Origin: Heterodontus francisci
Lineage: Eukaryota
Direction: 5' to 3'
DNA: 64,000 nt
NCBI RefSeq assembly: GCF_036365525.1
Contig: NC_090404.1
Coordinates: forward strand, 3,968,001 to 4,032,000
Shown here piece by piece: positions 3,601 through 61,654 of this stretch. Every line of letters begins with the position of its first letter. The stretch's first letter is position 1. Under the pieces are notes generated by a model. That model saw nothing but the letters and a program-made list of their open reading frames with translations, did not search any database and had not been told where the DNA came from. Made by a program: the position numbers and the translations under genes.

Positions 3601-3899
3601 AATGGAACCAGCAAGGCACAGTGGAACAGCCTGTTGACGAAAAGCTGGTTGAAGAGGAAAGCAGTGTCACACTAACCTGTACTTTGAAAACAATCTCTTC
3701 TACCCCTTCTGTGTTCTGGTACAGTCAGCACCCTGCTCAGACTCCACATAACATGCTTTATATCCATGCAGGGATAGTAAACCAGAACCCCAACTTCACT
3801 GACCGATTCTTTTCTCTGTTTACTAAAGCTACCAAGACCACCGAGTTAACGATCAGTCGTACCCTGATCCCCGACATAGCCGTGGATTTCTGTGCTGTA
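3601..3899 (+). pseudogene. TRAV/DV: TCR alpha/delta-type V pseudogene (RSS lost, YYC>DFC)
   Basis: VEQP...VTLTC...VFWYSQHP...DRF...LTIS...AVDFCAV, then immediately a repeat; decayed leader at ~3386-3447. Confidence 0.8.
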
Positions 3900-4153
3900 A
3901 TAAAAGCAAAATACTGCGGATGCTGGAAATCTGAAATAAAAACAAGAAATGCTGGAACCACTCAGCAGGTCTGGTAGCATCTGTGAAACGAGAAGCCGAG
4001 TTAACGTTTCGGGTCAGTGAATTAAGGTGGATCCCGATGGGTTCATTCCTTTAGGGTCAATCTACTTAAATGCTTCTGTTCAAGGAACCGACCGATTCAA
4101 AATAATATATGATAACGATGTGAAACACAGTGTTGTGTAAATTGTGAACTTAC

Positions 4154-4420
4154 CAGTTAATACAGCTGCAGCTTTGAGGAATAAATAAAAAGTAACACCC
4201 AACATGTTTGCAGAGAGCTAATGGCGGAATTAAAGGAAACGGGTTGAAGCTGAAATTGATTCCGTCAATACATGGGAAGATGTTAAGTCATATCCGGACA
4301 GTCTGTCGATTGGTTCCATCCTCACAGAGTCACGTGACAGCTAATCAGCTCACAGTCCCTTTGTTTTCTAATTCATCCAATCATCTCGCAGTTCAATTGT
4401 TTTGCAATTCATGACGTCAG
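4154..4420 (-). pseudogene. Orphan TCR V promoter and leader exon (MLGVTFYLFLKAAAVLT, 4154-4205) with no V exon
   Basis: CRE TGACGTCA 4412-4419, CCAAT boxes, G|gtaag donor; homologous to 18272-18590 on the + strand. Confidence 0.8.
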
Positions 4421-5291
4421 AACGTGTTGGAGCAAACGGAGTGAAATTGCTCTGCTTACAAGAGGGAACATGATGGAGATTAAACGCAAGGTTGGCCCTT
4501 AAACAGACATTTCGTGAGGTTACGACATTAAAGGGATATAATCAATGTTATTTTTCATTCTGTGTCGTTAAAAGTGCTGCTCATTGACCATTAGCACCAT
4601 CTACAGCAGATCTCAATGGGGATGAAGAGGCCCAGCGGACCTTGAACTATGCCATGAATTAAACAAACGTCCATTTATATGAATATAATGGGGAGTGACT
4701 AGCAGGTTTGAGGAGAACGCGGGTGCCATAAGCGGATGGGCTGGAATATTCTTAGGTGAGAAATATTAAAAATATTTACAAGATGCCGACATTAATAATA
4801 GTTTAATATTTAAAATATTGCAAAATTCTATTTGAAACTGATGCCACTATTTCTGAATCTGTTTCTTTTTCCCGTTTCTTCGATAATGCTGCTTCACGAT
4901 GTTCTCAGCCCGTAGCTCGCCAACATTGAAATCGTGAATGCAGCCTCCCACTACCCTCTTGTGGCGACTAAATATAACTACAAAAGGGCTCGTGTCCACT
5001 TATCTCATAATTCAGCTCCAAGGTTCACCCGAGCAAACCCGTGACTAGCCAAGAAACACACTGAGTTTCCTCTCGCAGACAGAATTTGTTTGCATGGGAT
5101 GAATAATTCCAAACAAAAGAGACAGGAAGTAAAGAGAGGGAGACTGTCCACTTACTTATGTGCCTGACTATTTAATGATCAGTTCATATATTTACTGGGA
5201 CATCTTCCCATCTTTATAATCGTTGTCTGCTCTATTTTCACAAGCCATGTCCCAGATTTGATTCAGTGAGAGGAGGTGAGAGTGCCTTGCC

Positions 5292-5769
5292 GGTTTTTGT
5301 ACGGGCGGACTGTGCCTCTGTAACAGTGTGAGGCTCAGCGCACAGTGATACACGGCAGAGTCAGAGACAAGAGCCCCGGCAACTTTTAGAGGAGCCGTTT
5401 TCTTGTCTTGGTCCAAATCAGCAGAAAACCTGTCAGGGAAATCTGGAGAATTATCTCCCGACACGGAGCTATATCTTTTCAGTAAATATCTCGGAGCTTC
5501 CCTGGGATATTGGACGTATCAGAAGAGAGTTGAGCCACCGTATGCTGTTGAATAATTGCAATTTAGTATTATGGTCTGTCCTTCCTGAACCATCAATTCA
5601 GGCGGATCCTGGGACACCGAATCTCTGCCAATCGTTCCTGAAACATAAATACAGAGCTTGTAGAATATCTTGGAGTAGATATAACGTATGTAACATACAC
5701 TGATTAATGAAACATAGACTCACCTTGTAAAACGACCATTAGAATCAGTAAGGAACATGGGGAACACAT
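5292..5769 (-). pseudogene. TRAV/DV: TCR alpha/delta V pseudogene: leader 5724-5769, V exon 5331-5637, 23-RSS 5292-5330
   Basis: Open except that the invariant Trp codon is TGA (5519-5521); RSS CACACTG-23-ACAAAAACC. Confidence 0.92.
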
Positions 5770-7149
5770 GGTGTCTGGATTAGACTTCGACAGAAAATAA
5801 CAAAATATTTTCAAAATCTTAACCTTTCTGGTCTGATATTAAAGGAAAAACTTAGATCAGAGCCAGGCTTCACTTAATAGCCGACTGAGGGGCGTTTCCA
5901 AAGGACGGGATTGGCAGGTCTCTCAGTATGACTCTGCACCAATCATTGTTACTTGTGCAGCGATTTCCGCTGCAAACTCTTTCCTTCACTGTCTGTGTCT
6001 TGTGTGTCTCTTTCCCTGTCTCACTCTCTTGCTCTGTGTGTCTCTGTCAGTATCTTTGTCTCTTCTCGCTTTGCCTCCTTTTCCCTCGAACTCAATGTCT
6101 CTATTCATAAATAGGTTGATCGATCTCTTATAAAGTTGAAGTGTGAGAACATTGAAAATTAGTCTCAGCCTGGCATTAATGAATTCTGAAAGACAAAGTA
6201 TCTGAAAGATTGCGATAGTGAGGTACAGCCCGTGAAAAGGACAATGTGCAAAGACTAGATTACAGCACGCAGACTCAGTACCGATAATGGGATAATTTAC
6301 ATGATTTAATGGGTTAACGTGTTTAGTATTAATTAAAAATAACCCGAACACATTGACATGTTATCAAGATAGCAAGATGGGACTAAGCCTGTAAGATATA
6401 GAACAAATAAAAGCTAAAAGAAAAAATGAAAATACGAGCTTGAGTCAATGCGGAATAAAAGACAAACTCTGCTCCCAATGGGAACGGGTAAGATCACTTC
6501 TGCAGTATCCATTGCCTTAGCTGGTAAGATTTATAATAATCTGACTTGTTAACTGTGCTTTTCCCTGTACTAAATGCAACTATTTAATTATCACAACCGA
6601 TTTGGTGTAATCTCCTTCTGAAAGTCTTTCAAAACGTATTTCTAAATAATAGTTCTCAGAATTGAAGGAAAAAATGCTGGGAGAACTACTGATGGATTCC
6701 ACCAGAGGACAGCAAACACTCATTAATCAGCCTGCAGCATCTGTTTGGAAAAGCTGATCTCTGCCAGTATTATACAGGGTACACACAGAACTGCTGAGCC
6801 CATTAACTGCTGAGCTAAGGTTCCTGGAGATAGCTTCACCCACTGGCAGATCCGGGTCTTGTTCATCAGCAACTCGTTGGTTTCAAATCTAATTGTGCAC
6901 CTCGAACTCATTCGGATTAAATTGATGAGTTCATCTGTCCTCAGTGAAGCGGATTCCCCAGACTGTCTCTGTCTCACTCGATGGCCCCCAGGTAAGAAAA
7001 TACAGATTCTGGGCACTACTCCAAATTCTAACACCCATTCTGTCAATTTAGTCACAATCCAGTTTCCGATGATCTGTTAAGTAGTGTGAAATTTATTTGC
7101 ACCATAAGAGGTATCTTTTTCCCGTTGCATTTCACCCTTGGGTAGGTCT

Positions 7150-8110
7150 CAGTTATGAATACATTAGACACCATCTCTGTTTATTTTACAGTAGGCCGTG
7201 TGTCAGTTATTACTGAACTAGACCATGCTTCTGTTTATGCTATACTGGACCCTGTATTAGTTAAACTTCTTTATAATTTTCCCTCTTTATATTACAATAG
7301 CCCCTGCCTCACTAATTACTGTACTAGGCCAAGCCTCTGCTTAAATTGCACTAGACTATGTCTCTGTTTATGCTGCAAAATATCCTGTCTCTCTTGACAT
7401 TATATTTGACCCTGTTTCATTTATTACTGCATTCGACCATCTGTTTGTGCATGTTAGACTGGGCCCTATCTCACTTATTACTGCACTAGACCATGTCTCT
7501 ATTAATATTGCACTAGTCCCTGTCTCTGTTATTACTGAACTAGAACATATCTTGTTTATATTACACTAGGCCCTGTGTTAGTTATTACTACAATAGACCA
7601 TATCTCTATTTATATTAAAATAGACCCTGTTTCAGTTATTACTGCACTAGGCCATGTCGCTGTTTATATTACACTAGGCCTTGTTTCACTTATTACTGCC
7701 CTAGACCATGTCTCTATTTATATTACACTAGTCCCTGTCTCAGTTATTACTAAACTAGACCATATCTTGTTTATATTACACTCGGTTCTGTCTCAGTTAT
7801 TCCTGCACTAGACCATTTCTCTATTTATATTGCACGAGGCCCTGTGTCAGTTATTACTGCAACAGACCATATCTCTATTTATATTACAATAGACCCTGTT
7901 TCAGTTATTGCTGCGCATGGCCATGCCTCTGTCTTTATTACGCTAGGCCTTGTCTCAGTTAATACCGCACTAGACCATGTCCCTGTTTATATTACACTAG
8001 GACCTGTCTCTTACTACTGTACTGGAACATGTCTCTATTTATATTGCACTGGACCATTTCTTTTTATAACCGATTAAGTCTTCTCTCAGCTGTTACTTCA
8101 CCAGACTATG
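7150..8110. repeat. Degenerate ~27/54-bp minisatellite
   Basis: Repeated (ttattactgcactagaccatgtctctg / tttatattacactaggccctgtctcag); also at ~12970-13600. Confidence 0.85.
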
Positions 8111-9213: not shown

Positions 9214-9294
9214 CTGTAACAACGTACAGACTGTCAACAATCTGAAAGTAAATATCACCTATGGAACAAATAATGACCATTTAAACACACTCAC

Positions 9295-11010: not shown

Positions 11011-11300
11011 ATCTGAGCGATGGAGATTCTGTTACTGAGTGGAAATCTCGCTCACACAGACAGAGGGAGAAGATGTCACTTTAACCTGCACCTATCCCAG
11101 CGATGGTTATTACTTATTCTGGTACCGCCAATACCCAGGCAGACAGTTTGCAGTCCGGAGGTACACAAGCGGCGGCGATGAATGTATGGCGGTTTTCTGA
11201 TACAGTCCAGCAGTCAGACAAGTTGCATCGATTGACCATCTCGAAGCTGCGGCTGTCTGACACCGCGGTCTATTGCTGTGCACTGAGTGCTGTGCTACAG
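11011..11300 (+). pseudogene. TRAV/DV: TCR alpha/delta V pseudogene (two frameshifts, no usable RSS)
   Basis: GDSVTE / EGEDVTLTCTY...YLFWYRQYPG / RFSD...LTISKLRLSDTAVYCCAL in three frames. Confidence 0.85.
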
Positions 11301-15371: not shown

Positions 15372-15678
15372 ATGGGTAACAGAGACTCAGGGCTCCAGTA
15401 AGAACAAGGAGTTGGATCAGTAAATTCAGTAATAACATGTAGTTGTTCTGTATGGTTTAATTTGCCAGCTGTAACCTGTTCTGGTATCGCCAGTATCCAC
15501 ACCGAGTTCCTCAGTATCTGTTCAGAAACGATAGTCACTAGAATAAGGAGACGGCTCCCGGTTTTTGAACACTTCAGCACGTAATTTCAACCGGATGGAA
15601 GGCATTTTTCTCCCATCTATGAAAGGCTTGCGGATCACAGACAACGACTATTATTACTGCACCATGAGACCCACAGTG
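15372..15678 (+). pseudogene. TRAV/DV: Heavily decayed TCR V pseudogene
   Basis: NLFWYRQYPHRVPQYL and DYYYCTMRP followed by CACAGTG (15672-15678); stops, frameshifts, no nonamer. Confidence 0.8.
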
Positions 15679-16553
15679 AATAAGATTCCTCGACCAGACT
15701 ACAGGTCGGTATTAAGGGTGGGCTCCAGGAAAAAAAGGGATTGCATCCTACAGCCTTTCTATAGAAAATGGACGGGAACATACACTTTTTCCGAGCTGTT
15801 CTCTTTGTCAGTGCTATCACAGTTGTGAAATGTGTCTGTAGCATTTGAACCTAGGGCCAAATTCAGAAATTTCCAGTTACCTGTTAACAATGACCTGCAG
15901 ATCTCTGGGATGAATAACAGGATCGATCTGTCCAAGTAAAGGTCCTTGATATGACACATATCCGTCAGGCCACACCTTGCAAAGTTTCTGAAACAAGAGC
16001 TGCTGAATGAAATCATCACTTTAGTCGTACAAGTTGAGCCTGAGTGGTACCACACGCAATTTGAAGAGGAATGACTGCTTATAACGTCCCTGATATCCTT
16101 AGGACTATAGCAATGATGTTCATGGTCTGGAGGGTATTCATTCATACCAGGGCTTCAGAGCAATTCGAATTCTTTCACCTTAATTAGAGAGAGATCTATT
16201 TCTCAAAAAAGATAAATATATCCAGTTAGACAACAATGGAGACAAAGTGAGAAAGAAACAGAAAAACTGACAACGAGATAAAGAACAAGACATTGAGATA
16301 GGGAGAAAAACACACAAACGCAGTCTGGGAAGAAAGTATTGGTGAGACACAGCAGTAACTGGTCCTCAACGAACCTGACTGGTTCACAGCTGACATAGTA
16401 TCTGAGCCACCAGCCAACGCAACCCAGAGAAACGCCCGTCCGTTTTACAACAAGTGAATTCTGCCTCGATCAAATGTCATTCTTCAATATCGGATTAGAA
16501 GATTAACAATTAAAACCTACTGCTATTTTCGGTCGAACTCTAAACCAGACGCC

Positions 16554-17004
16554 ATTTGCTTCCTATGTTTGTGATTGATTATACTGGCCTTGCTGTTTAA
16601 GTGGTCAGTGTGTCTTCCAGGGTCATATTCATTCTTTTGATTTTGACTTCTGTGTTTTGTTACAGGAACGAGTGGTGACGATTCAGTGTCACAGGACCCA
16701 CCTCAATTAACAGTTCAGGAAAGACGGGCGGTAATTCTGAACTTTAGTTACACGACAGCGGAGCCTGACTTAAATCTCTTCTGGTACATCCAGTATCTGA
16801 GGGAAGCTCCGACATTTTACTGAGAACATGCGGCATGGTACAGGGGGATAAATCTCCAGATTTTCCAGATTCTGGTGAATTGGACAAAGACAAGAAAACA
16901 GTTCCTTCAAAAGTCGACGGTGCTCTTGTCTCTGACTCTGCCGTGTGTTACTGTGTCCTCCGCCCCACTCTGTTAGTGTATCGTAGTCAGTCAGTACAAA
17001 CATG
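16554..17004 (+). pseudogene. TRAV/DV: TCR V pseudogene, same family as the 5.3 and 8.9 kb Vs (V exon 16666-16965)
   Basis: DSVSQDPPQLTVQE...; first Cys>Phe, frameshift after EAP, leader ATG>ATT with a stop; RSS CACTCTG-23-ACAAACATG. Confidence 0.88.
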
Positions 17005-18524
17005 GCAAAGGACTCTCACCTCCTCTCACTGAATCTGGATTGTCATCTGATAATGGAGCACAAACCAAACTGTGGAGAGAAACACATTGGTCAGTTTATA
17101 GATGGGTAGTTCATAAAACAGTTCCAGAGATACACGGACTGCCCCCCGCCTACATTTTCTCCTTCAATGACCACTTCCTACTTTGTTTGAAGGTATCCAG
17201 CCATTGCCGACAAGCGTCTGTGAATTCCGGCTGTGGAGTCCGTGAGTATAAAACTCAGTGTGTTTCACAGCTCAGTAACGGGTTGGTTCTTGTTAGTTTG
17301 GGAACTGAATAATAAGATAGTTGGACATTCGCACTCCAGTCATCACACCGAGTGCTTGGCTGCAATATAACCAAAAGGTAGATCGGATAATGAAGAATAT
17401 AAAACAGTTAACTCTGGATATAACTTTAAATTAAACTGCGGAATTATAGCTTAGGGACACGGGTTCAAACTATGAAAGGTCATTTCAGGACCGATATCAG
17501 GAAATTCTTCAGCAATCAATACGTGGAATCAGGTTCCAGATGCAACAGAAGAGGGTCAAACCTGGGAATAATTTCATAAAATGATGGATATTCCAAAGGC
17601 GAAGGTTGGAGCGGGTTGGGGGTGGAGGCATGTTGGTGTTAAATGATCTATCCTAAGAGCAGTAGAATTCCAACGCCCGCTCTGCATGATCCTGTGATCT
17701 TGTGATCAATCGCAGGAGTTGGCGATTGGTACTGGACATGCAGACATATTTAGTCACTGTGTTGGTGCCAGTGTGGAAACGAGTGCAGCTTCAGAACAGC
17801 ATTCAGTGACTTGACTGAAGAAACGGATTGAAGAAAAGTTTCGGTAACAGAACCATTCATTTCAAATGGAAGTTGCTTTGATCAATGTTATTATGAAGGA
17901 ATGAAATATTGTTACTAATGGCGATATTCTGCATTTATTAAGAAGCAGCTCACCACAGAATCACTAAAGCAATTTGTTGTGACACTCCGCCACTCTCCTC
18001 AAAGCTGTCAATCATTCCCTATTGCATTCAAGTAAAAGGCATTTATCTCCAGAACAACTGCAAACTTGTTATGCTGGCTGTGGGAAATCTTAATGAGCAG
18101 TGAACAGCTCTTATCATGGAATTCAATGGCACAGATGCCAGGACAACATGAATTATTTTCCTCAGGCCCCAGCCTCACAGACTGGCTCTGTTAAAGGGCC
18201 AGCATTGAGTTTTAACCCCGTCCAGTTCCCTGTTGTGAGAACAATTTCATTGGACTCCCTGTTCACTGCTCTGATGTCATCAATTCTGCAATAAAGGACC
18301 TATGCGCTGATTGGAAGAACTGGAGAATAAAGGATTTGTGATCTGATTGGACGAATTAAAGAACAAAGGACCCGTGAGTTGATTGGATGTCACCTGCTGA
18401 CCCGGCCAGCAATGTATCTATCCGGAGATAGGCTGGATATTGAACAGGATCTTCTCAAGTCCTGATGAAAGCAATTCCAGCTTCAGTCCGTTCAGTTCAG
18501 ATCATCCATCAACTGTCTAAAAAC

Positions 18525-19382
18525 ATGTCAGACGTTACTTTTTACTTATTCCTCACAGCTGCAGCTCTTTTAACTGGGAAGTTCACAATTTACACAAGGC
18601 CGTCTTTCACATCTTGATCAGATAGTTCATCAATCTGTTCCCTGAAGACAAGGGTAACAATCGATTGATCGGAAGTGAACAAAGCAATCCAGATCTACCT
18701 TGAGTCAACACTGAACACTGTTTGAGCAAACTCGACAAACTCCCCCAGGAGGAGAAACTTGAAGAGTTGAGCTGAGATTACAGGGGAATGGCTGACAGAC
18801 ATGTTCCTCCCCACCAGGGCTAATGACAGACACCGATAGACACACGAGTCTTACACCCACAGGCCATTTGTAGGCCTCCCTTTACAGTCAATCCCAGCAC
18901 CTTCCTGTTGCACCTTCTGAACAGTGGAAAGTGTATTTGTGTTTACCTGTCCTAATTTCTCAGTTAAGTATTGGGGGTGACGGGCTGATTCTGGGAGATA
19001 GACGTTGGTTAATTTAATATTGCTCTGTTCTTGCAGGACATTGTCGAGGAGACTCCGTTTCACAGACACCAGCTGTAATCACAATAATTGAAGGAGCTGA
19101 TGTTCGGTTGCACTGTAATTATACAGCTACAAGCAGCAGCAATCCTTACCTATTCTGGTACCGTCAGTATTCCAGTGGATACATGGAATATCTGCTGCAA
19201 AGAAACAAATATAGTGAGGACCGAGAAAGATTTCCAGAGGACCGTTTTTCAGCGGAGCTCGATGATTCGATCCGAACCGTCCCGCTGAAAGTATCTAAAA
19301 CAGAACTGACAGACTCTGCGGTGTACTACTGCACACTGAGACCCACAGAGACACAGAGCTGGGCTGATCCTGTACAAAAACT
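18525..19382 (+). pseudogene. TRAV/DV: TCR alpha/delta V: leader 18525-18576 with GG donor, intact V exon 19037-19343, 23-RSS 19344-19382
   Basis: DSVSQTPAVITIIEGADVRLHCNY...LFWYRQY...DSAVYYCTLRP; CACAGAG-23-ACAAAAACT; donor reads G|ggaag where the paralog at 4154 has G|gtaag. Confidence 0.85.
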
Positions 19383-19677: not shown

Positions 19678-21130
19678 TCGGCAACACCGGACAGCCCGCT
19701 TCTACCTCCTTCCGAAAATTCACAAACAAGACTGTCCTGGCAGACCCATCGTTTCAGCCTGTTCCTGCCCCACTGAACTTATTTCTTGCGATCTTGACTC
19801 TATCTTTTCAACTGGTCCAGTCTCTTCCCACCTGCATCCGTGACTCTTCTGAAGCCCGACATCATTTTGACAATTTCCGGTTTCCTGGCCCAAACTGCCT
19901 CCTGTTCACGATGGACGTCCAATGTTTCTACACCTCCATCCCCCACCAGGAAGGTCTGAGGGCTCACTCCTTCTTCCTTGAACAGAGGTCTTCGTTATGC
20001 CTGTCGTTTTGTGGGATATGTCGAACATTCCTTGTTCCAGTCCAAATAAGGCCCCCTCCCCCAACTCTTTTTTCGGTATATTTATGATTGTCTTGGTGCC
20101 GTTTCCTGCTCCCACCCCGAACTGGAAATCTTTATCAACTTTGCTTCTAATTTTCACCCTTCTCTCTCCTTTATATGGTCCATCTCCGACACATCCCTTC
20201 CCTTCTTTGACGTCTTTGTCTCCATCTCTCGGGATAGGCTGTCTAACATAAACCCACAGACTCCCACAACTACCTCGATTACACTTCTTCACAGCCTACC
20301 TCCTGTAAGGACTATAGTCCATTCTCCCAGTTTCTCGGTCTCGAGCGCATCTGTTCTGATGATGCAACCTTCGGCAGTAGCGCTTCTGACCTGTTTTCCT
20401 CCTTCCTCAACAGAGCATTCCCCGCACCACCTCCCACCACATCCCACGCCCCGCCCCCCACAACGCCCCACACTGCGTTTGACGGGGCCCTTCAACCGTG
20501 CCCGGCCCATTTCCCGCACTTCTGCCATCACCCCTTCCACTCCCTCCCAGAACCGCGAGTGCTCCCCTTCTCCTCACTTTCCACCCCACCAGCCTCCATA
20601 TCCAAAGGATCATCCTTCACCATTTCTGTCACGTCCAGCATGATGCCAATACCAAACGCAGCTTCCCCTCCCCTCCCATGTCAGCATTCCGAAGGGATCA
20701 TTCCCTCCCCGACACCCTAGTCCACTCCTCCATTACCCCCAACAAGTCATCCCCTTCCTATTGCTCCCTCCCATGCAATCACTGGAGGTGAAATACCTGC
20801 CCCTTTACCTCCTCTCTCCTCACTATCCAAGGCCCCAAACACTCCGTTCAGATGAACCAGCGATTTACTTGTACTTCTTTCAATGCAGTATACTGTATTC
20901 GCTGCTTGCAATGCAGTCACCTCTGCACTAGGGAGACCAAAGGCAGATTGGGTGACCGCTTTCTGGAACACCTCTGCTCAGTCCAAAAACATGCCTCGAG
21001 CTTCTTGTCGCTTGTCATTTCAATACCCGCACCCGCTCCCACCCATACAAAGCCCCGCCCCCGCCCCCCTCCCCCCCCCACCCCCACTCTGCTCTCTTGC
21101 CCACTTCTCTCTCCTGGGCTTGCAGCAGTG
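19678..21130 (+). mobile_element. Penelope-like retroelement fragment (RT plus GIY-YIG endonuclease)
   Basis: [47 protein letters not shown]. Confidence 0.85.
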
Positions 21131-21139
21131 TTACATGTG

Positions 21140-31345: not shown

Positions 31346-32562
31346 ATTATTCATTTTTCTTTGAATTGTGCCTCCTTCTTTGTCTAATAGGCTTCAGGAT
31401 TAGGAAGTCATTCCCAGGGGTTGTCCTCTCTGATGTATTCAATAGTTCCTTGAATGTGGGCTCCCTGTTGTGGCAGATTGACCCCAGGCTCTTGGAATAA
31501 TTCGCAGCATTTATTCTTAATGGTCTATCGTTCCAGATATTCATTAGTCTTGAGGAATCATTCCCAGGGTTTAATGTCTCTCGTGTCTGTGTTATATTTT
31601 TAACCTGGTCTGTGCCTGCCCTGGGAGCGTTTGCTGGTGCAGTGTAGAGGGAGCTTTACTGTGTATCTAACCCGGGCTGTGCCTGTCCTGAGAGTGTGTT
31701 TTGCGGCAGTGTGAAGGGAGCTGTCCTCTGCATTATCCCGTGCACTACCGATCCTGGGAATTTTTGATGGACATTATTCTTTCATATACTATACTGTATC
31801 AGCCTATGATGGAGCAGGACGCTGCTCCTTAATGCAACGTGGCACCTGCCTGTGACAGACTATAAGATGGGAGGTGCTCCTCTTCGCTGTGCGGCCATTC
31901 TGTGCCCGGGCATTGGCATTTTGAGGCAGAAGGAAAGGTGTCTTTATTCTGATGGGCCACTGGATGGCGCAACAGCACCATCACCGAAAGACTTTTGGTT
32001 CAAACACAAACCAGACAGGACTGGTGGAAAATAGCTGTCAGGAAAAGGAAAAATGTGTAATCGGTAAAATGGAGTGTGTGAATGGGCCTTGGAGCAAGGA
32101 ATTCAGCAAAGTCAAGTTAGTCCATTTGTTACTCAAGATTTATTAACAATTTCAAAAAAAACATTTTACAGAAACATTTTTAAAGGGTCCAAAGTGAATT
32201 TAGCACCTGTGAGTCACATTGAGGACAAAACACATGCGATCTGAGCTGTAGACTACTTCTAAAATTGTTGCAGATTAGAGAGAAAACAGGGGCTCAACAT
32301 AAAGAGAAGGAAACAGTTGCGAATAAGGAATAGTTATTTATTTACAGATGAAATTCAAACTATTGTGAAACTCGAAGGCGCATAGATATTATAGGTAAGA
32401 TTATCTGACACAATTCAAAGAGAAAAACGGAAACAATGTTTATGATCTTCTCAGCTACAGATTCTGAACCATAAACTGACGGCAATTTACTTTTACAGTT
32501 TGTTTGATAATACAGAGATGTTAAAAAATAAGGAAAATCCAGGGCGGCCAAAATTCGATCGA

Positions 32563-32571
32563 TCACTTAAC
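32563..32571 (-). CDS. IGHM: IgM TM2 exon (VK*)
   Basis: ttttacag|GTT AAG TGA completes the KVK cytoplasmic tail; AATAAA at 32337-32342 downstream. Confidence 0.9.
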   Translation of the reverse strand, partial: VK

Positions 32572-32703
32572 CTGTAAAATAGGGATAAAAGAATGAAGCA
32601 GAGATTTCGTGGTCTTGGACATTCATCTCAGAACTATGAAATTTTAGAGATTTGTTAAACCGCTTCATTTAATTTGAAATGTGAGTGGATTGAATATTCT
32701 CAC

Positions 32704-32831
32704 CTTCACCAGAGTGACGGCAGCGCTGTAGAAAATGCTCAGGAAGAACAGGATGATGAATGTTGAAGCGGTTGTCCAGATGTTGCCGCTCTCTTCCTCA
32801 TTGTCTTCAATCCAGATGTGGCCTGAGTAAT
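32704..32831 (-). CDS. IGHM: IgM TM1 exon ([43 protein letters not shown])
   Basis: Acidic spacer plus the conserved TASTF..LF.LS..YS...TL transmembrane motif; AAG|gtgag donor; absent from the ORF track. Confidence 0.93.
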
Positions 32832-33349
32832 CTTCGGGTTTTTAGAGGAGAAATATATTTAGATCGTTCATTAATCCAGGATATAAGATTGTCAATTTGC
32901 ACTCGCAGAGTTCTTCCTTAAGCCATTATTTTGCTCTCTAATTTAATTTTCAGTTTGTATCCATTGTGAAGTTAATCACTCTCAGCAATCTACCTCTGTT
33001 ACTAACCCCACAGCCATTCTTCCCATATGATCCTCGTCCAGGCCCTGTTGGAAAATATGATATTTCTTTCTTCAGGGTCAGGCGCTATTCTAGTCTGGAT
33101 CAATCTTGTTCTATCATTCGGGATATCGATGGAATTTTACTGATCAATATCGATAGTTTTGAGATTTTCATTGGTGCTGGGTAAGAGATTGGATGCGAGT
33201 TCTAATCTTGTTTATTTGTGATGGAAGTTGTTGGTCAATCATTAACTGACCTCAGTTTCTAAGTGAAAACTTTGCTTCACTGTGTTTGTAGGTCCAACAT
33301 GTATGAGGGAATATGTTGGAGAAGGTGCCCATTCAAACAGTGCATTTGA

Positions 33350-34320
33350 ATGCTACTTTCACATATAGCCTGGTGCTTTTGTTTGTACGCTTTAATACAT
33401 GTGTATGTGTGCATAAGTATCTGTTACTTTGCATCACTCAGTGCGTGTCCATGGCTTGTGTGTGTGAGATTTAATGTATGTTTCAATGCGTTCCTTTGTG
33501 CACCCGCCTGTGAATGTATCAATGTGCGTATTTATAACTTGATGCCCATGTGTTGTGTCCCTGTATGTTAGTATGTGCTTATGTGCCAATGTGTATCAAT
33601 GTGTGTTTTCAAGTGGCCGCGTGTGTGTGTATGTGCATGTGCGTGTGTATAAAATATATCATCCTTAATGTTTTGTCTTCATTCATCCATGTGTGTGCAT
33701 GAGCATGATAATGTTTGTTTTTGTGTGTGGTTTGGTCCCCATGCGTGCTTTATGTTGTGAGCTTTTGTGTTGACAGATGTCTTTATGTTTTCCTGTGTGT
33801 CAATGTGTGTTTATGTTTCCATGTGTGCGTATGAGTTTGTTAATGTTTGTTTTTGTGTGCTTCTGTCCCCATAAGTGTGATAATGCTTCTGCTTTTGTGT
33901 TGATGTCTACGTTTATGCATTAATATGTGTGATTATGTGTACATGTGTGCTAATGTGTGTGTTATGTGCATGTTTTTGCATCCATGTACGTGTCATAATG
34001 TTAATGTTGGTGTCTATTTGTGTGTGAGTGATCGTGTTAATGTGTCTGTTTAAATGTTTGTGTGCAGATGTGTTAGTCTGTTAATGTGTGAGTATGTTTC
34101 CATCTAGCTGTGTTTATGTCAATGATTATGAAAGCTTTTCCGTCTATGTTTCTGTGTTTGTGAGACTGTACTAATGTGTACATTTATGTTTATTTTTGCG
34201 TGGGTGACTTTGAAGTGTTTATATCTGCGTTTGAGTCTGTTTGTGTGTGTAGGTGTAATTGTGTGGTTGTGCATTTGAGTGTGTTTATGTGTGTGTTTTT
34301 GTCTGTGTGCCTGCGCATCT
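33350..34320. repeat. Degenerate TG-rich tract in Cmu4-TM1 intron
   Basis: Interrupted (TG)n over ~1 kb. Confidence 0.8.
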
Positions 34321-34489
34321 TTATTCTTGTTCAAAGTTTTACAGAGAATAAATAACCGGGTCTGACCCTGACGGTGTGCATTATGGAGAATATTCTTCAC
34401 TGTTCTTTGTATAAATGTATTCTGTGCGAGATGTCATCTGACATCATCTGAATGACTGCAACAATGTAACTGATGGATAAAAACTGAAG

Positions 34490-34690
34490 TTATGGAAATG
34501 CTCAGCAGGTCAGACAGCAGCTGTGGACAGAGAAGCAGAATTAACGTTTCAGGTCGGTGCCCTTTTCACACACCTGAAATGTTAACCCTGCTTCTCTCTC
34601 CACAGATGCTGCCTGACCTGCTGAGTATTTAAGCATCTTCTGTTTTTATTTCAGATTTCCCCTATCTGCAATATTTTGCTTTTATTTCCA
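34490..34690. mobile_element. Penelope-derived inverted-repeat element
   Basis: ~60-bp arms (34496-34555 / 34572-34630) forming a hairpin; related copies at 3900, 50452, 52250, 53690 and 63245. Confidence 0.7.
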
Positions 34691-35589
34691 TGAAACTGAT
34701 GGGCCTCAGAAACATCAGGAACAGGAGACGATTAAATCTTCAGCTAGGTTTAGATGATTATGTTATTAGAATTTAACAGGGAAACCGTGAACGATATTAC
34801 GTTACATAAATATATATTTTACAATGTGATTCCCATGTGGAAAGTTTAAAATCTTCGCACACTGCGCTCGAAGCCGACTTTGTACTGATGGCATTTGAGT
34901 CCATTTAATAGAGAGCAGGGGGAGTGGGAGTATAAGGTTTACAAATGTCCTTGCCCCTTTTTCTGTTGGAGGAAACGTGGCGAGGAGCTACAGTCAGTTC
35001 ACAATTCTCTTTACCGTCTGTCTGTTGCAGAAGTACCGTTGCAGTGGATTCACAAGTACCCTTTCCTCTTCTCTGTTTGGAAAGTGGGGTACAGTGTTAT
35101 AGTAAATTCCTCTTCCCCCTCTTTCTGATGGGGGATTTTGGGAGGACTTCACATTCGTGTGTGGCCATCACTTCAGTTCCCAGTGCGCATGATGCTTCAA
35201 CTAAAAACTGACCCTATTCTGAAGGGATGGCCAACATGAGAAGCAGGTACACCGAGATCTAAATGCACTGCGTATTTTTGTTGGTAAGGAGAAATGTCCA
35301 GATTCCCCATCTCCTCCTCCCCGGCCCCCCACCCCTGTCCCCCTCTAATGCTCCCCACCGCCTCCGCCTCCTCCAACGGGAGGAAAGTTACTGAAATTCT
35401 TCCACAGAATCCAATAATGAATCAGGTTTACTCTGTGAATTAATATGTGCTGGAAACATTGGTTGTACAAGACTTGGGCCCGAGACCTGCAAATATCATG
35501 CTTTGATGAAAAGACCTACACTTAGCAAATGTGGGAAGCACAATTAATTGAGCTGTTGTGTATTTAAATCGCGATTGGAAGAAAAGGTC

Positions 35590-35607
35590 TTTATTGTGTT
35601 TTTTATT
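35590..35607 (-). terminator. Secretory-form polyadenylation signals (two AATAAA)
   Basis: AATAAA at 35602-35607 and 35590-35595, 30-45 nt after the stop. Confidence 0.75.
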
Positions 35608-35635
35608 TAAGAATTGAAATGCAATCGAGAAATTC

Positions 35636-36030
35636 TCATTGACATGAATTAACGGTGTCCAACAGTGCAAGGGAAATGTTCACAAAACTCGGTTTACCGC
35701 TGGATTTATTAACTGTTCTGTTGATGATCTTCAAGGGGATTGCTTCATGTCCCACCACACAGGAGTAAGAAGCGCCGCTGGCCCACTCCTCCGCTGCAAT
35801 GGATAACAGGCTGTAGATGAAGAAGGAGCTCTTGTCGTTCTCCGCCATCACCTCGGTGTTCTTGTAGTTGCCAGGATTCACCGACTTGTCATTGACGGTC
35901 CACTTGACGAAGATCTCTCGGGGGGAGAAACCTCTCACTAAGCAGGTGAGGGAGAGGAACCTCTCAGCGGAGACTTCTTCTGCTGGGGGCAGGAGAACAG
36001 ACACAGACGGTTCCCGCAGATCTTTCCATG
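35636..36030 (-). CDS. IGHM: IgM Cmu4 plus secretory tailpiece ([20 protein letters not shown])
   Basis: [17 protein letters not shown]...YSCVVGHEA; tailpiece with NIS sequon and penultimate Cys; internal donor G|gtaaac at 35698/35697 for the membrane form. Confidence 0.95.
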
Positions 36031-36500
36031 CTGAAAAATTAAAATAAATGTCAATAAACTAGACAATTTCAGAGACAATGACACCGGTGGTTAAATGTGA
36101 GAGAAATTGTGAAGGTTTCCCTTTTCCTCTCTGGGGCCTGTGCTGTTTTCCAGCTGGCGCAGAGGCGCTGCAATCCTGCTCGCCGAGAACATAAAGGATT
36201 AGACTGGAAAATTACATAGAACTTGCAGCACAGGAGCAGGCCATTAGGACGAGCTAGCCTATGCTGGTGTTTATGCTGCACACGGACCTCCTCCCACCTT
36301 ACTTCAGCTCTTTCTATTCCTTTCTCCATAATCCACGTATCCAGCATCGCCTGAAATGCATCACCTCTGGTCCCAGGGAGGTTCATTAGTGAATTACAAT
36401 TAAATTATCAGCGTAATCCATTCAACCACTTAGTTGGGCCTTGCACAAACACCGGCAAGAAGCACAACCTCTGACTTATTGCTTCAATCACATTGCTCAC

Positions 36501-36806
36501 CTTCCTTGTGGATGGAATCTCTGAGAGGAGTCGGCAGATCCTGATGGCTCACCACACAGTAGAACACAGCCTCACTCAGCCAGGCTTGTGTCGAGATGTC
36601 TACGGTGCTGATCACGCTGTCGGGATCCTCTCCGGGTTGGACGGCAATCTCTGATTTCAAAGGCTTCTGTTCTTGTGTCCAGGACACGTTGACACCATAA
36701 GGAGCATTAGACACGACGCAGGTTAAGGTGACCGTGGCCTCCAGTAAGACCTGTTCTATTGATGGTGGCAGTAGTTTAATTACTGGATGATTGCACTCGG
36801 AAGAAT
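36501..36806 (-). CDS. IGHM: IgM constant exon Cmu3
   Basis: [16 protein letters not shown]...LTCVVSN...[13 protein letters not shown]; 306 nt, phase 1. Confidence 0.95.
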
Positions 36807-38210
36807 CTGTAGAACAGAAATGAGAGTCAAAGAAATCTCCATCTTCAGGATCAGGACGCGAGTATTTAACTATCACTTTCTTCAGGAGGGGAAAAACACC
36901 TTTCACTTCAACACTGTCGTTCATGGGAAGAGCAACGATTTGTAAAATCTGGGACATCCAAGCGGATCACATCTGTGCTGAATATAATGGCTCTGTCACC
37001 CCAGGACATGAGCTACACATGAAATTCATAGTGGCTCAAAACGAATGAAATTACGAATTTTAGGACCAACTAGAAACAAAGTTAATGTTCTGGTGCCTTG
37101 TCAGTATATTTGGGGAGATGAAAATGTTCAGCAACCAGTCAGAGGAGGGGCGAAAGGTCGGTAAAATGCAGTCCCAAGGTTTTTGTTTTTGTGTGGTGAG
37201 GAATAATTCGCAATACCGGATGAGATAGTTTTCTAATATCTGCCACGAGTGAGTATTTCTCGTGTGTCGGCATGGCGTTAGAAGGCGATCTGACCACAGG
37301 ACTGTAATAAGAGCATAAGAATAAGAGTAGGCCATTCAGCCCCTCGAGCGCGTTCCGCCATTCAATTACACGATGGCTGAATTGTATCTTAATTCTGTTT
37401 ACCCATATATAACCCTTAATACCCTTACCTGTCAGAAATCTATCACTCGCAACATTAAAGTTTTCAATGGATGTCAAGCTTCTAAAGTGAGTTGGGGGAG
37501 AGAATTCCAGAGTACCGCTATCTACTGTGTGAACACTCCCTTCCTGATATCATTCCTGAATGACCATGGTCCAATCTGAAGGTTATGCCCCCTTGTTCTG
37601 AAGTTCCTCACCAGAGGAAATATTTTTCTCCATTGACTCCATCAATTCCAGTAAACATCTTAACCACCTCATTTAGATCACCCTTTAATCTTCTATACTC
37701 AAAGCAATACCAGTTTGGCCTGTGAAACCTGTCCTCATAACTTAACCCGATCAGCCCCGTTATCATTATGGTCAATTCTTGTTGCACCACTCCCAAGGCC
37801 AATACACTCTTCCTGTGCTCTACAGTCCAGAATTGAACACAGTTTTCTAAATAGGGTAGATGCTCTTTATGGCACCTGATTCCGAGGCCGTTACCAAGAA
37901 AGGGTTCCAGATGCCGATTGCTGCTCCGTGTATGATTAGCCCATTCAGGATAAAGCTGATATACAGGCCACCTCACTCACTACATGACATCACAGTCGAG
38001 CTAAACATTCTTTCATGATGTGATGACATGTTGAACCGTGAGCAATCCTAATTTCTAATTTCTAAATCCTAAACTCACAGCGAAATAACACATAAAAACT
38101 GCACGATGGCGATTTAGAAATTGTTCTTTTTACTAATTCCAATAAATTCCTGACTTTCAGTAACATGGAGTACAGAAAGATGTGGAGCTTCCTGGGACTG
38201 TGCCTCTTAC

Positions 38211-38528
38211 CTGGAGATCCGGTGATGTTTCGGCTTTGGATGACCGCTTGATGAGAGACCTGGCAGGTATAGACCGTGTTGGTGAACCATTCCCGAGCGG
38301 GGACTGTCAGCCGACTGGTCGCTGAGAAGTTCCCGTTCGTTTCACAGGCGGGAGAGGTAACGAAGCCCGATTCCATGGGATGTCCATCCTTCAACCAACT
38401 CACGGTTATTGCTTCTGGATGGAAATCGATGATTGAACACACGACAGTTGCAAATCTGCTGCTTGTGATTTCTTCACTGGAAGTCTGGGTGAGGATAACA
38501 GTTGGATGGACGATGTCACCTTTACAAT
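38211..38528 (-). CDS. IGHM: IgM constant exon Cmu2
   Basis: [11 protein letters not shown]...[16 protein letters not shown]...YTCQVSH; 318 nt, phase 1. Confidence 0.95.
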
Positions 38529-38740
38529 CTTCAAGAAAAAACATGTTAGACATTTCGAGAAGAAATTAATAACTAATACAAACTGCTCTTATATTTTAAC
38601 AGGTTATTTGCATCAAGCAGGCACTAACTGATGTTTCCAGGGGTCTGAACTGTGCACAACACTCTAAATGTGGAATAGCCAAAGTTCTACACAAGATCCG
38701 TCGAGCTTTTCTGTTTTTCCACAGTTTCCACAACACTAAC

Positions 38741-39037
38741 CTGGAATTTCCTTGATCCAGAGCGACTCTCCACGTCGAACCTCGCAGTAGATTTTGCTGC
38801 TTCCCACCTCTGACTCGGTGATGGTTAACTGGCTGCTCAGGGTGTAGGTTCCCTTCTTGTTCAGCACTGACGGGTAAGTCTTCAAACCAGTGGTGATCGG
38901 TTCTTTACCTTTCTTCCAGGAAACGCTGGTGATTTGGGGGATGTAGTCCATCGCCAAACAGCCGTAGGCCATGGAGCCGTCGGTGTTGGGTTGTTCACAG
39001 GAGCACAGGCCGTAAAGGGTTGGGGGAGACGGTGTCG
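38741..39037 (-). CDS. IGHM: IgM constant exon Cmu1
   Basis: [14 protein letters not shown]...GCLAMDY...[16 protein letters not shown]; C1-set domain, phase-1 splice sites, 297 nt. Confidence 0.95.
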
Positions 39038-46411: not shown

Positions 46412-46459
46412 CTGCAGTCACCGTCACCATGGTCCCTTGTCCCCAGTACTCAAGATAGT
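46412..46459 (-). CDS. IGHJ: IgH JH segment (YLEYWGQGTMVTVTA) with 23-RSS
   Basis: WGxG motif, G|gtaag donor, upstream GGTTATTGT-23-CAATGTG (46460-46498). Confidence 0.95.
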
Positions 46460-46837
46460 CACATTGTTACATTCCCTGGGCTGGGTCACACAATAACCGG
46501 CTCTGCACAGAATAGTGAGAAATCCATTATTATTTTAAATATCCACACTCCAGAGGCAAAATAAAATCTTGATGGTTCTTTGTAAAATTATAACTGCGTT
46601 AATAATTCTTTTCACTCTTTATAAATTTCCCTGATGTTTTATATATCAGCAATTATTGAAATCACCAACTGATGAATGAATAATTAATCCGTTTATCCAT
46701 AATAAACCGTGCTAGGAGGACAGTGCTGGACACAAATAGTACTTCACTGTATATATAGTTGGATTGTTAAAGCGAGCACTGACCCAGACTCATCAATTAG
46801 TGTTGAGGGAGTTTTTGTATTGACAGTAACTGCTGTG

Positions 46838-46850
46838 CCACCCAGTATAT
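46838..46850 (-). other. IgH D2 segment (ATATACTGGGTGG), 12/12 RSS
   Basis: AGTATTTGA-12-CACTGTG (46851-46878) and CACAGCA-12-ACAAAAACT (46810-46837). Confidence 0.92.
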
Positions 46851-47227
46851 CACAGTGAGACATCCCGTGTCAAATACTGCGGCGGACTGTTAACTGTAAA
46901 ATACAGAGATTACATTTCACAGCGATCTCAAAAACATGATTGCGATCCCCCTAAGAGTACATCAGTGAGATAATTCAGTTTATACCAGTCATTATATTTA
47001 TAAAGAGATCGGAATATTTCAGAATCATCTGTGCTGATTTAGCGTGACAGTCAACATGAATAAAGCAGGAGACTTTTATACAATTTTACAAATCTATATT
47101 GTATTTCCCCAATTTTATATTTAATCCTCATTGTTTATGGACCATCCGCCATGTTAGTGATCGCTGGTTTGAGCAAACTCCCTGTCTGGGATTTTTGTAT
47201 GAAGAACTCGCTCTGTACAGCACCGTG

Positions 47228-47242
47228 ACCCACTATAGTACC
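47228..47242 (-). other. IgH D1 segment (GGTACTATAGTGGGT), 12-RSS 5' and 22-RSS 3'
   Basis: AGTATTTGT-12-CACTGTG (47243-47270) and CACGGTG-22-ACAAAAATC (47190-47227). Confidence 0.93.
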
Positions 47243-47654
47243 CACAGTGACACGAACCTGCACAAATACTGCACTCACTCTCTGTTCAGTACTGCCTCCC
47301 AATATTCACTTCAAATAAAAATTCACTTCTGATCTAATTCAGAATATATCCAAAAGTTTATACCATGCAGTAGGAATTGAACCCAGCTCCAAGTAACGCC
47401 CTCCAGGTATCACTCCCATTAAAAAACTAGCATCTTATCCAGATCTGCAATTGCTGACACTGTTAACATTAAAAATCAGCACAGCCAAAATTACTCATCA
47501 GTTAGTGTCTTAGATTTGTACCATTGAATTTTCACTATGCTAGTTCTGTGAGAGACAATCTATGGCCTGGTTCTGAACACCGCCGTTAATATTGTATTTA
47601 ATAAAATTACTGACCGTCAGTTTATGATGGAAGTTGTCGAATTCTCTCTCCATA

Positions 47655-47693
47655 TGTTCTTGTACATGTCCAGCCCTGGTTCCTCTCATTGTG
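47655..47693 (-). other. VH 23-RSS
   Basis: CACAATG-23 bp-ACAAGAACA. Confidence 0.9.
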
Positions 47694-47998
47694 ATCACTG
47701 GCACAGTAATATATAGCGGTGTCTTCAGTCTTCAGGCTCTTCATGTCCAAAGCGAAGATGTTGTTTGAAGTGTCTTTGGACGCAGTAAATCGATCTTTAA
47801 TCTCTGGGGCGTAAGCATTGTTGGATGAACTGTAGTAGCTAACCAGCCACTCCAGCCCCTGTCCGGGAACCTGCCGGACCCAGAACATCCAGTAGCTGCC
47901 AAGAGTGAACCCGCTGGTTTTACAGGTCAGTCTCAGGGAGCCTCCGGGTTTCCCGGTCTCTGCCTCTGGCTGAGTCAACACGACATCCGAATGGACAC
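47694..47998 (-). CDS. IGHV: IgH VH exon, intact
   Basis: acag acceptor; [22 protein letters not shown]...[12 protein letters not shown]...[10 protein letters not shown] with both Cys and the Trp. Confidence 0.96.
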
Positions 47999-48125
47999 CT
48001 GTAAAAAATATCAAAAACCCCGAGGATTAATCCTGGTGAAATGATTCTTTACTCTGTAACATTCCAGAGAGGGACTAATACTAAAACAGTAACAGTGAGA
48101 GACTCGGACAATAAAAACTACTCAC

Positions 48126-48171
48126 GGGATAAGAAAACCAGTAACAGACTGAGAGAAATCGCCGACCTCAT
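48126..48171 (-). CDS. IGHV: IgH VH leader exon (MRSAISLSLLLVFLS)
   Basis: ATG, hydrophobic 15-aa signal, phase-1 donor C|gtgag. Confidence 0.92.
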
Positions 48172-61650: not shown

Positions 61651-61654
61651 CATT

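What the first reader, a model, noticed from the sequence alone, without database searches (positions are those of the whole stretch)
3601..48171. Intact IgM heavy-chain gene physically contiguous with a TCR alpha/delta V array
Seen: a complete IgM cluster with secreted and membrane exons ends at 32563, only ~9.5 kb from the nearest TCR-type V RSS (23110), with no N gap between them. Established: shark IgH genes are V-D-D-J-C clusters, and IgHV-TCR delta chimeric rearrangements and Ig/TCRAD linkage are known in cartilaginous fish. Inference: this is a fully functional antibody gene, not an orphan VH or decayed C, bordering or inside the TCRAD locus, so B- and T-cell recombination substrates share one domain.
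Basis: partly seen in the sequence, partly recalled or inferred. Interest (0 to 1): 0.82.

Follow-up and report, generated by a model that had tools for sequence, protein, structure and literature searches.

The report
Shark IgM cluster beside TCR V genes
A complete, unrearranged shark antibody (IgM) gene cluster lies 13 kb from seven T-cell-receptor-type V gene segments, six of them defective; the layout is real as assembled but was published for four other sharks and rays in 2025.

Summary
On the minus strand, from 48171 to 32563, there is a textbook cartilaginous-fish IgM minicluster. It has a split leader, VH (23-RSS), D1 (12/22), D2 (12/12), JH (23-RSS), four phase-1 Cmu exons, a secretory tailpiece, and TM1 and TM2. 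Every part is open and unjoined. The only N run in the window (50049-50356) lies outside the interval.

RNA-like contigs show the predicted CH2-CH3, CH3-CH4 and CH4(cryptic donor)-TM1 joints. A loose end matches this window's TM2.

Between 3.6 and 19.4 kb there are seven V segments, and their profile ranks TCR alpha and V-delta chains above any single-V antibody chain. Only one (V3, 9340-8868) is fully intact. The others have a stop at Trp41, frameshifts, a lost Cys23, a leader without ATG, or an RSS displaced by a repeat.

The "RSS at 23110" has no recognisable V. The true gap from the IgM cluster to the nearest V RSS is 13.2 kb, filled with Penelope and LINE debris.

This interleaving of IgH and TCR alpha/delta V genes is the "AgRC" described by Flajnik et al. 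2025. The scan has also noted it many times elsewhere in this (probably horn shark) genome. Contiguity was not checked with reads, and the TCR D/J/C position cannot be tested from this window. It is a new example of a known kind, of low to moderate interest.

The parts
48126..48171 (-). IgM VH leader exon (ATG at 48171, GT donor at 48125); TATTTAAA box at 48270-48263
   Evidence: Read directly from the sequence. The exon is 46 nt, phase 1, and encodes a hydrophobic leader, MRSAISLSLLLVFLS.
47694..47998 (-). VH exon, open, with Cys23, Trp41, YYC and the ending CASD
   Evidence: Pfam V-set E=4e-18. 88% identical to HV01_HETFR, the Heterodontus francisci Ig heavy chain V region. VH profile 202 bits against 58 bits for the alpha/delta profile.
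47655..47693 (-). VH 23-RSS (CACAATG - 23 - ACAAGAACA)
47190..47270 (-). D1 (47242-47228, ggtactatagtgggt) with a 5' 12-RSS and a 3' 22-RSS (CACGGTG-22-ACAAAAATC)
46810..46878 (-). D2 (46850-46838, atatactgggtgg) with a 5' 12-RSS and a 3' 12-RSS (CACAGCA-12-ACAAAAACT)
46412..46498 (-). JH: 23-RSS (GGTTATTGT-23-CAATGTG) and J coding 46459-46412 (YLEYWGQGTMVTVTA), followed by a GTAAGA donor
38741..39037 (-). Cmu1 exon (AG acceptor, GTTAGT donor, phase 1)
   Evidence: Pfam C1-set E=7.7e-11.
38211..38528 (-). Cmu2 exon
   Evidence: C1-set E=3.8e-20. The donor at 38211 is confirmed by RNA joints 36806..38211.
36501..36806 (-). Cmu3 exon
   Evidence: C1-set E=4.5e-9. Both ends are confirmed by RNA joints 36806..38211 and 36030..36501.
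35636..36030 (-). Cmu4 exon with the secretory tailpiece ([20 protein letters not shown]); cryptic TM donor after 35698; AATAAA at 35607-35602
   Evidence: C1-set E=3.7e-21. The best PDB matches covering both domain and tail are IgM mu chains, E about 1e-45. RNA joint 32831..35698.
32704..32831 (-). TM1 exon ([43 protein letters not shown])
   Evidence: The acceptor at 32831 was fixed by an RNA joint with CT..AC ends, which is GT..AG on the minus strand.
32563..32571 (-). TM2 exon (VK, stop)
   Evidence: The loose end of an X2 contig at 32702 reads on into exactly this TM2 sequence.
3601..3899 (+). V1: alpha/delta-type V exon, open, but without an adjacent RSS. A dispersed repeat starts directly after the Cys-Ala-Val codons, and the leader is unconvincing.
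   Evidence: The tail of the ORF (3902-3974) matches copies at 50453, 53916 and 63166. Alpha/delta profile 119 bits.
5292..5707 (-). V2: alpha/delta-type V with a perfect 23-RSS (CACACTG-23-ACAAAAACC, 5330-5292) but a stop codon in place of the invariant Trp41
   Evidence: 165 bits
8868..9340 (-). V3: the only fully intact alpha/delta-type V. It has a leader at 9340-9295 (MFSLCCLLIIVVLLP), a GTGAGT donor, a V exon at 9213-8907 with Cys23, Trp41 and Cys104, and a perfect 23-RSS at 8906-8868.
   Evidence: V-set E=3.7e-15. Profile 179 bits. Relatives are V-J joined cDNAs.
11042..11297 (+). V4: alpha/delta-type V pseudogene (frameshift between FR2 and FR3, RSS decayed)
   Evidence: 35 bits
15461..15684 (+). 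V5: alpha/delta-type V pseudogene (several stops and frameshifts; the heptamer remains, the nonamer is lost)
   Evidence: 27 bits
16647..17011 (+). V6: alpha/delta-type V pseudogene (Cys23 replaced by Phe, a stop, a frameshift, RSS decayed to CACTCTG-23-ACAAACATG)
19037..19382 (+). V7: alpha/delta-type V with an open V exon (19037-19343) and a good 23-RSS (CACAGAG-23-ACAAAAACT). The leader homologue at about 18924-18976 has no in-frame ATG.
   Evidence: 147 bits
19794..31324 (.). Spacer of retroelement debris. It holds two diverged, inverted Penelope-like copies (20178-20993 and 23913-24695; GIY-YIG ORF 23743-24054) and a LINE with an esterase-like ORF (28041-28406) and reverse transcriptase (30100-30585).

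Best explanation
This is one ordinary germline (unjoined) IgM heavy-chain minicluster of a shark, probably Heterodontus. It sits in the chromosomal region where elasmobranch IgH miniclusters are interspersed with TCR alpha/delta-type V segments, the antigen-receptor complex (AgRC) of Flajnik et al. 2025.

The cluster should work as such clusters do. RAG joins VH, D1, D2 and JH within the cluster, as the 23 / 12-22 / 12-12 / 23 spacer pattern allows. The transcript is then either polyadenylated after the Cmu4 tailpiece (secreted form) or spliced from a cryptic donor inside Cmu4 to TM1 and TM2 (membrane form).

The V segments 13-29 kb beyond its 3' end are relics of local duplication of alpha/delta V genes. 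Six are defective. One (V3) keeps everything needed for RAG use and could serve a distant TCR D/J/C.

What is shown: the anatomy, the intactness, the V class, the splice sites at family level, and the lack of gaps. What is inferred: actual rearrangement and expression of this particular cluster, use of V3, and true physical contiguity.
For: - Exon and RSS anatomy were read directly from the sequence.
- Pfam gives V-set and four C1-set domains.
- Cmu4 plus its tail matches IgM mu chains best.
- VH is 88% identical to a Heterodontus francisci VH.
- In RNA-like runs X1, X2 and X7, exon depth is 1e5-1e6 against 10-670 in introns. The joints fall exactly at the predicted CH2/CH3, CH3/CH4 and CH4-cryptic/TM1 sites, and a loose end matches this TM2.
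- Intron depth falls after the secretory poly(A) site. Intron contigs carry the same variants as the same-sample DNA run X3, which suggests pre-mRNA of this locus or its allele.
- An alpha/delta profile finds exactly seven V loci.
- With the profile of V3's relatives, every single-V chain in the PDB top 60 is a TCR alpha chain (91-104 bits). V-delta-1 constructs reach 115 bits. Antibodies appear only as multi-V constructs.
- Relatives P0109, P0141 and P0218 are V-J joined, with ..LIFGxGTKLTV...
- The only N run lies outside the interval.
- The published layout is in PMC12227049.
Against: - No read-level proof that 19.4-32.5 kb is correctly assembled.
- Cmu exons are multi-copy, so the RNA joints are not specific to this cluster.
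- DNA contigs of the laid sample differ from the window by about 1-2% in introns, so they come from another individual, another haplotype or a close paralogue.
- No TCR D/J/C is in the window.
- No octamer (ATGCAAAT) was found upstream of VH.
Confidence: 0.85

Rival explanations
1. Assembly misjoin. The IgM cluster and the V array come from different places and were joined inside the Penelope/LINE repeats at 19.8-31.3 kb.
For: The interval is almost entirely repeats. Contiguity was not tested with reads.
Against: There are no Ns in the interval. The two Penelope copies are only 77-85% alike, so they are poor substrates for assembly collapse. The same juxtaposition is published for four other elasmobranchs and was noted repeatedly elsewhere in this genome by the scan (leads only).
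Confidence: 0.05
2. The Vs are a dead orphon field with no role. Only the IgM cluster matters, and the adjacency is a fossil of past duplications rather than a shared recombination domain.
For: Six of the seven Vs are defective. There is no TCR D/J/C within 64 kb. The Vs have mixed orientations.
Against: V3 keeps its leader ATG, splice sites, Cys23, Trp41, Cys104 and a perfect nonamer. V2 and V7 keep near-perfect RSSs, so decay is recent or incomplete.
Confidence: 0.35
3. The Vs are not TCR alpha/delta V genes but light-chain or other V genes.
For: With single-sequence phmmer, some antibody VL-containing constructs score about as well as TCR alpha chains. No labelled shark TRAV/TRDV references were available for a tree.
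Against: The profile search ranks only TCR alpha and V-delta chains among single-V chains. The FR3 motif DRFSAxLDKxxKTVPLxI..SDSAVYxCA and the 23-RSS fit TRAV. No J-C follows any V, as it would in a shark IgL cluster. The nearest named relative is a 'T cell receptor alpha variable 8-6'.
Confidence: 0.04

Closest known systems
Elasmobranch antigen-receptor complex (AgRC): IgM/IgW/IgNAR miniclusters linked to TCR alpha/delta (Flajnik et al., Sci Adv 2025, PMC12227049)
   Same: [quoted passage not shown] It draws the same consequences: trans-rearrangement and shared targeting of hypermutation.
   Different: The species is different, probably a horn shark, which is not among the four. In this stretch almost all the Vs are pseudogenes. 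Linkage to PSMB5, UrIg2 and TCR C genes could not be examined from one window.
Classical horned-shark IgM heavy-chain cluster (VH-D1-D2-JH-Cmu, about 16 kb; Litman laboratory, 1980s; from my own knowledge)
   Same: The same order, the same RSS spacer pattern (23 / 12-22 / 12-12 / 23), V-D-D-J spacings of about 0.4 kb, a J-C intron of about 7 kb, four Cmu exons, two TM exons, and a total of 15.6 kb.
   Different: Nothing of substance. Here the flanks are also seen.
IgHV-TCR delta chimeric rearrangements and TAILV / VH-delta segments in nurse shark (cited as refs 26, 27 and 33 in PMC12227049)
   Same: A VH with a 23-RSS lies on the same DNA as TCR-type V genes, which gives a physical basis for such chimeras.
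   Different: No TCR delta D/J/C is in the window. No chimeric transcript was examined. The Vs next to the cluster are alpha/delta-type, not VH-like TAILV: the VH profile scores 15-31 bits on the four where it scores at all (V2, V3, V4, V7), against 27-179 bits for the alpha/delta profile across the seven.

Membership tests
Cartilaginous-fish IgM heavy-chain minicluster | Split leader and a VH exon ending in YYC, followed by a 23-RSS | tested here: met
Cartilaginous-fish IgM heavy-chain minicluster | Two D segments with 12/22(23) and 12/12 RSS, and a JH with a 23-RSS, a WGxGT motif and a splice donor, all within about 1.6 kb of VH | tested here: met
Cartilaginous-fish IgM heavy-chain minicluster | Four C1-set Cmu exons with phase-1 AG/GT borders | tested here: met
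   The CH2/CH3 and CH3/CH4 borders are confirmed by RNA joints.
Cartilaginous-fish IgM heavy-chain minicluster | A mu-type secretory tailpiece (N-glycosylation site, penultimate Cys) and a membrane form made by splicing a cryptic Cmu4 donor to TM1 and TM2 | tested here: met
   Joint 32831..35698 and a loose end matching TM2.
Cartilaginous-fish IgM heavy-chain minicluster | This particular cluster is rearranged and expressed in B cells | tested here: inconclusive
   Exon reads are not cluster-specific. Intron contigs in RNA-like runs share variants with same-sample DNA and drop in depth after the poly(A) site. This is suggestive only.
TCR alpha/delta V gene segment | A V-set domain with Cys23, Trp41 and Cys104, and an open frame | tested here: met
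   Met for V3, V7 and V1. Not met for V2 (Trp41 stop), V4, V5 or V6.
TCR alpha/delta V gene segment | Closer to TCR alpha/delta V than to Ig or TCR beta/gamma V | tested here: met
   Profile against PDB. Alpha/delta against VH profiles. No tree was built with shark references.
TCR alpha/delta V gene segment | A 23-bp-spacer RSS directly after the V exon | tested here: met
   V2, V3 and V7 have one. It is decayed or absent in V1, V4, V5 and V6.
TCR alpha/delta V gene segment | Found joined to a TCR alpha or delta J-C in transcripts | not tested
   Only relatives (P0109, P0141, P0218) are seen V-J joined.
AgRC layout (IgH clusters interleaved with the TCR alpha/delta locus) | An IgH V(D)JC minicluster and alpha/delta-type V exons on one uninterrupted stretch | tested here: met
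   as assembled.
AgRC layout (IgH clusters interleaved with the TCR alpha/delta locus) | Same chromosome as TCR alpha/delta D-J-C, other IgH isotypes and PSMB5 | not testable with these tools
   Only this window is readable. Scan notes place NAR-TCR/TCR delta cassettes 3.8-4.5 Mb away. These are unverified leads.

The most novel reading that the evidence does not exclude
The mixed orientation makes cis Ig/TCR hybrids possible. A plus-strand alpha/delta V with a 23-RSS (V7-type) faces the same way as the 12-RSS 5' of D1. One RAG inversion of 19344-47242 would therefore place a TCR-type V in front of D1-D2-JH-Cmu, giving a TCR-V/IgM heavy chain. Conversely, this VH could reach TCR delta D segments in cis. 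If such joints occur in vivo from this locus, it would be a natural source of hybrid receptors.
Probability: 0.06. Interest if true: 0.6.

Novelty: new member of a known kind. Interest (0 to 1): 0.25.

Why it matters
This gives a cleanly annotated example, to the base, of the IgH/TCR alpha-delta interleaving in what is probably the horn shark. That is the species in which shark IgH clusters were first defined, and it was not among the four species of the 2025 description.

It also adds a caution. Here the TCR-type Vs beside the antibody cluster are mostly dead, so physical proximity alone does not show a shared working recombination domain.

Tried and rejected
- **Word-index protein search with V3.** It returned only 3 unnamed hits and was of no use for classification.
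- **Full HMMER search of V3 with two cluster look-ups.** There were many relatives, but nearly all were 'uncharacterized' or 'Ig-like domain' proteins. Only one was named as TCR alpha variable. No labelled shark TRAV/TRDV set could be obtained, so no tree was built.
- **Single-sequence PDB searches.** These did not separate V-alpha from VL. The profile search did.
- **An eighth V at 22.76-23.11 kb.** By eye it has a 'TAVY' motif and an RSS-like string. tblastn gave only short TAVYxC-type matches on both strands, and neither V profile hits it. I rejected it as a V.
- **Cmu2 word search.** It returned only chimaera Ig-like fragments, because full-length mu chains fall outside the length window.
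- **Horn-shark IgH/TCR map in the literature.** No paper was found in the held library.
- **Octamer upstream of VH.** None was found.
- **Spliced IgM model.** It was never joined.


Full report
**What is there**

The window has a single N run, at 50049-50356. The stretch from the V array to the IgM cluster is therefore gap-free as assembled.

ORF listing, tblastn and direct reading show a complete IgM heavy-chain cluster on the minus strand:

| Part | Coordinates (minus strand) | Notes |
|---|---|---|
| Leader exon | 48171-48126 | |
| VH exon | 47998-47694 | |
| VH 23-RSS | 47693-47655 | |
| D1 | 47242-47228 | 12-RSS 5', 22-RSS 3' |
| D2 | 46850-46838 | 12-RSS on both sides |
| JH 23-RSS | 46498-46460 | |
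| JH coding | 46459-46412 | YLEYWGQGTMVTVTA, then a GT donor |
| Cmu1 | 39037-38741 | |
| Cmu2 | 38528-38211 | |
| Cmu3 | 36806-36501 | |
| Cmu4 | 36030-35636 | tailpiece [20 protein letters not shown]; AATAAA at 35607 |
| TM1 | 32831-32704 | |
| TM2 | 32571-32563 | VK, stop |

All borders are AG/GT and phase 1, and no exon has a stop or a frameshift.

- Pfam calls the VH a V-set domain and each C exon a C1-set domain.
- Cmu4 with its tail matches IgM mu chains best, over both domain and tailpiece.
- The VH is 88% identical to a Heterodontus francisci VH and 70-81% identical to those of other sharks. One relative of the TCR-type Vs also comes from a 59.5-Mb H. francisci chromosome. The genome is therefore probably a horn shark, as earlier scan notes say.

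**Expression evidence**

Three small runs of the same species behave like RNA. Exon depth is 1e5-1e6, against 10-670 in introns.

- Their contigs skip exactly 36030..36501 (CH3/CH4), 36806..38211 (CH2/CH3) and 32831..35698 (cryptic Cmu4 donor to TM1). The ends are GT..AG on the minus strand.
- The last joint moved my TM1 acceptor nine bases upstream of my first guess.
- A loose end at 32702 continues into this window's TM2 sequence.

These exons are multi-copy, so the joints prove the splice pattern for the family, not for this cluster.

Intron contigs in the RNA-like runs carry the same variants as the same-sample DNA run X3. Their depth falls from 300-670 (CH2-CH3 intron) to 3-50 beyond the secretory poly(A) site. 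That fits pre-mRNA from this locus or its allele better than DNA carry-over, but it is only suggestive.

The DNA contigs differ from the window by about 1-2% in introns. The laid sample is therefore another individual, another haplotype or a very close paralogue.

**The V array**

tblastn and a local scan of the whole window with two profiles find exactly seven V loci outside the VH.

| V | Coordinates | Strand | State |
|---|---|---|---|
| V1 | 3601-3899 | + | Open V exon. A dispersed repeat begins right after Cys-Ala-Val, so there is no RSS. The leader is doubtful. |
| V2 | 5707-5292 | - | Perfect 23-RSS, but a stop replaces the invariant Trp41. |
| V3 | 9340-8868 | - | Fully intact: leader with ATG, good splice sites, Cys23, Trp41, Cys104, and CACACTG-23-ACAAAAACC. 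|
| V4 | about 11042-11297 | + | Frameshift; RSS gone. |
| V5 | about 15461-15684 | + | Several stops and frameshifts. |
| V6 | 16647-17011 | + | Cys23 replaced by Phe, a stop and a frameshift. |
| V7 | 19037-19382 | + | Open V exon and CACAGAG-23-ACAAAAACT, but the leader homologue has no in-frame ATG. |

This rests. One V is intact, three are nearly so and three are wrecks.

**Are they TCR alpha/delta Vs?**

Single-sequence PDB searches did not separate V-alpha from VL. I collected relatives with the full HMMER search and aligned eighteen sequences (A1).

- Three of the relatives are V-J joined cDNA-like sequences, with ..LIFGxGTKLTV...
- The only informative name among twenty looked up is 'T cell receptor alpha variable 8-6'.
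- With the profile of A1, every single-V chain in the PDB top 60 is a TCR alpha chain (91-104 bits). V-delta-1 constructs score 115 bits. Antibodies appear only as constructs with two to four V domains.
- On the four V loci where the VH profile scores at all (V2, V3, V4, V7), it gives 15-31 bits. The alpha/delta profile gives 27-179 bits across the seven.

I accept 'alpha/delta type'. The caveat is that no tree with curated shark references could be made.

The string at 23072-23110 is a weak RSS look-alike (5/7 and 6/9). I could not attach it to a V. tblastn gives only short TAVY-type matches on both strands, and neither profile hits 22.7-23.2 kb.

The nearest credible V RSS ends at 19382, which is 13.2 kb from the TM2 stop. 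The spacer holds two diverged inverted Penelope-like copies (77-85% alike, with a GIY-YIG ORF) and a LINE with an esterase-like ORF and reverse transcriptase.

**How it most likely works**

The cluster is a standard self-contained unit. The spacer pattern permits VH-D1, D1-D2 and D2-JH joining by the 12/23 rule. Alternative poly(A) use and splicing give the secreted and membrane forms.

The Vs lie downstream of the cluster's 3' end, in both orientations. V3 could only serve a TCR D/J/C far outside the window.

A plus-strand V such as V7 points its 23-RSS the same way as the 12-RSS 5' of D1. One inversion could therefore put a TCR-type V in front of D1-D2-JH-Cmu. Here the candidate V7 lacks a start codon, and I saw no evidence that this happens.

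**Comparison with what is known**

Flajnik et al. [quoted passage not shown] - IgH genes stay as V(D)JC miniclusters.
- The authors discuss trans-rearrangement and shared hypermutation as consequences.

Earlier notes of this scan describe the same layout in many other windows of this genome over at least 9 Mb. They place NAR-TCR and TCR delta cassettes 3.8-4.5 Mb away. I used these notes as leads only. I checked the paper they pointed to, but I could not check the distant loci.

No paper on the horn shark map turned up in the held library.

**Verdict**

It is a new instance of a known kind, in a species not yet described.

Contiguity across the repeats and membership of the TCRAD locus proper remain untested.

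The spliced IgM protein was never assembled; exons were searched one at a time by reference.

Noticed in passing
window 7146-8061 and 59895-61667: A 27/54-bp satellite (unit about TCTCTGTTTATATTACACTAGGCCCTG) occurs between V2 and V3 and again beyond the IgM cluster. The long 'ORFs' at 59.9-61.7 kb (VSVYITLDP repeats) are translations of it, not genes.
   Followed up: partly
window 3900-3990; copies at 50453-50527, 53916-53990 and 63166-63318: A dispersed repeat tail (..AATGCTGGAACCACTCAGCAGGTCTGG..) begins immediately after the last codons of V1, where its RSS should be. It looks like a retroelement insertion at, or in place of, the RSS.
   Followed up: partly
window 20178-20993 and 23913-24695: Two Penelope-like elements lie in inverted orientation, 77-85% complementary. 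One has a GIY-YIG ORF (23743-24054). They enclose the RSS-like string at 23072-23110.
   Followed up: partly
window 27517-31324: A LINE whose upstream ORF has a GDSL-esterase-like domain (28041-28406), followed by reverse transcriptase (30100-30585). Its reading frame is broken into pieces. A second RT fragment of the same kind lies at 62301-63162.
   Followed up: no
window 33300-34430 (Cmu4-TM1 intron): A long CA/CACA-rich low-complexity tract gives spurious His/Thr-rich ORFs. Contigs were cut there in the read laying (33615-33652).
   Followed up: no
window 32560-38555: DNA and RNA contigs of sample S1 differ from the window at the same intron positions (about 1-2%) with no trace of the window's own letters. 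The public runs found are not from the assembled haplotype, or they represent a near-identical paralogous cluster.
   Followed up: partly
window 50049-50356: The only assembly gap (308 N) is flanked by a simple repeat (translates as SIYLSIYL), 1.9 kb upstream of the VH leader ATG (48171).
   Followed up: no
window 48172-48800: No canonical octamer (ATGCAAAT or ATTTGCAT) was found upstream of the VH leader, only a TATTTAAA box at 48270-48263.
   Followed up: partly
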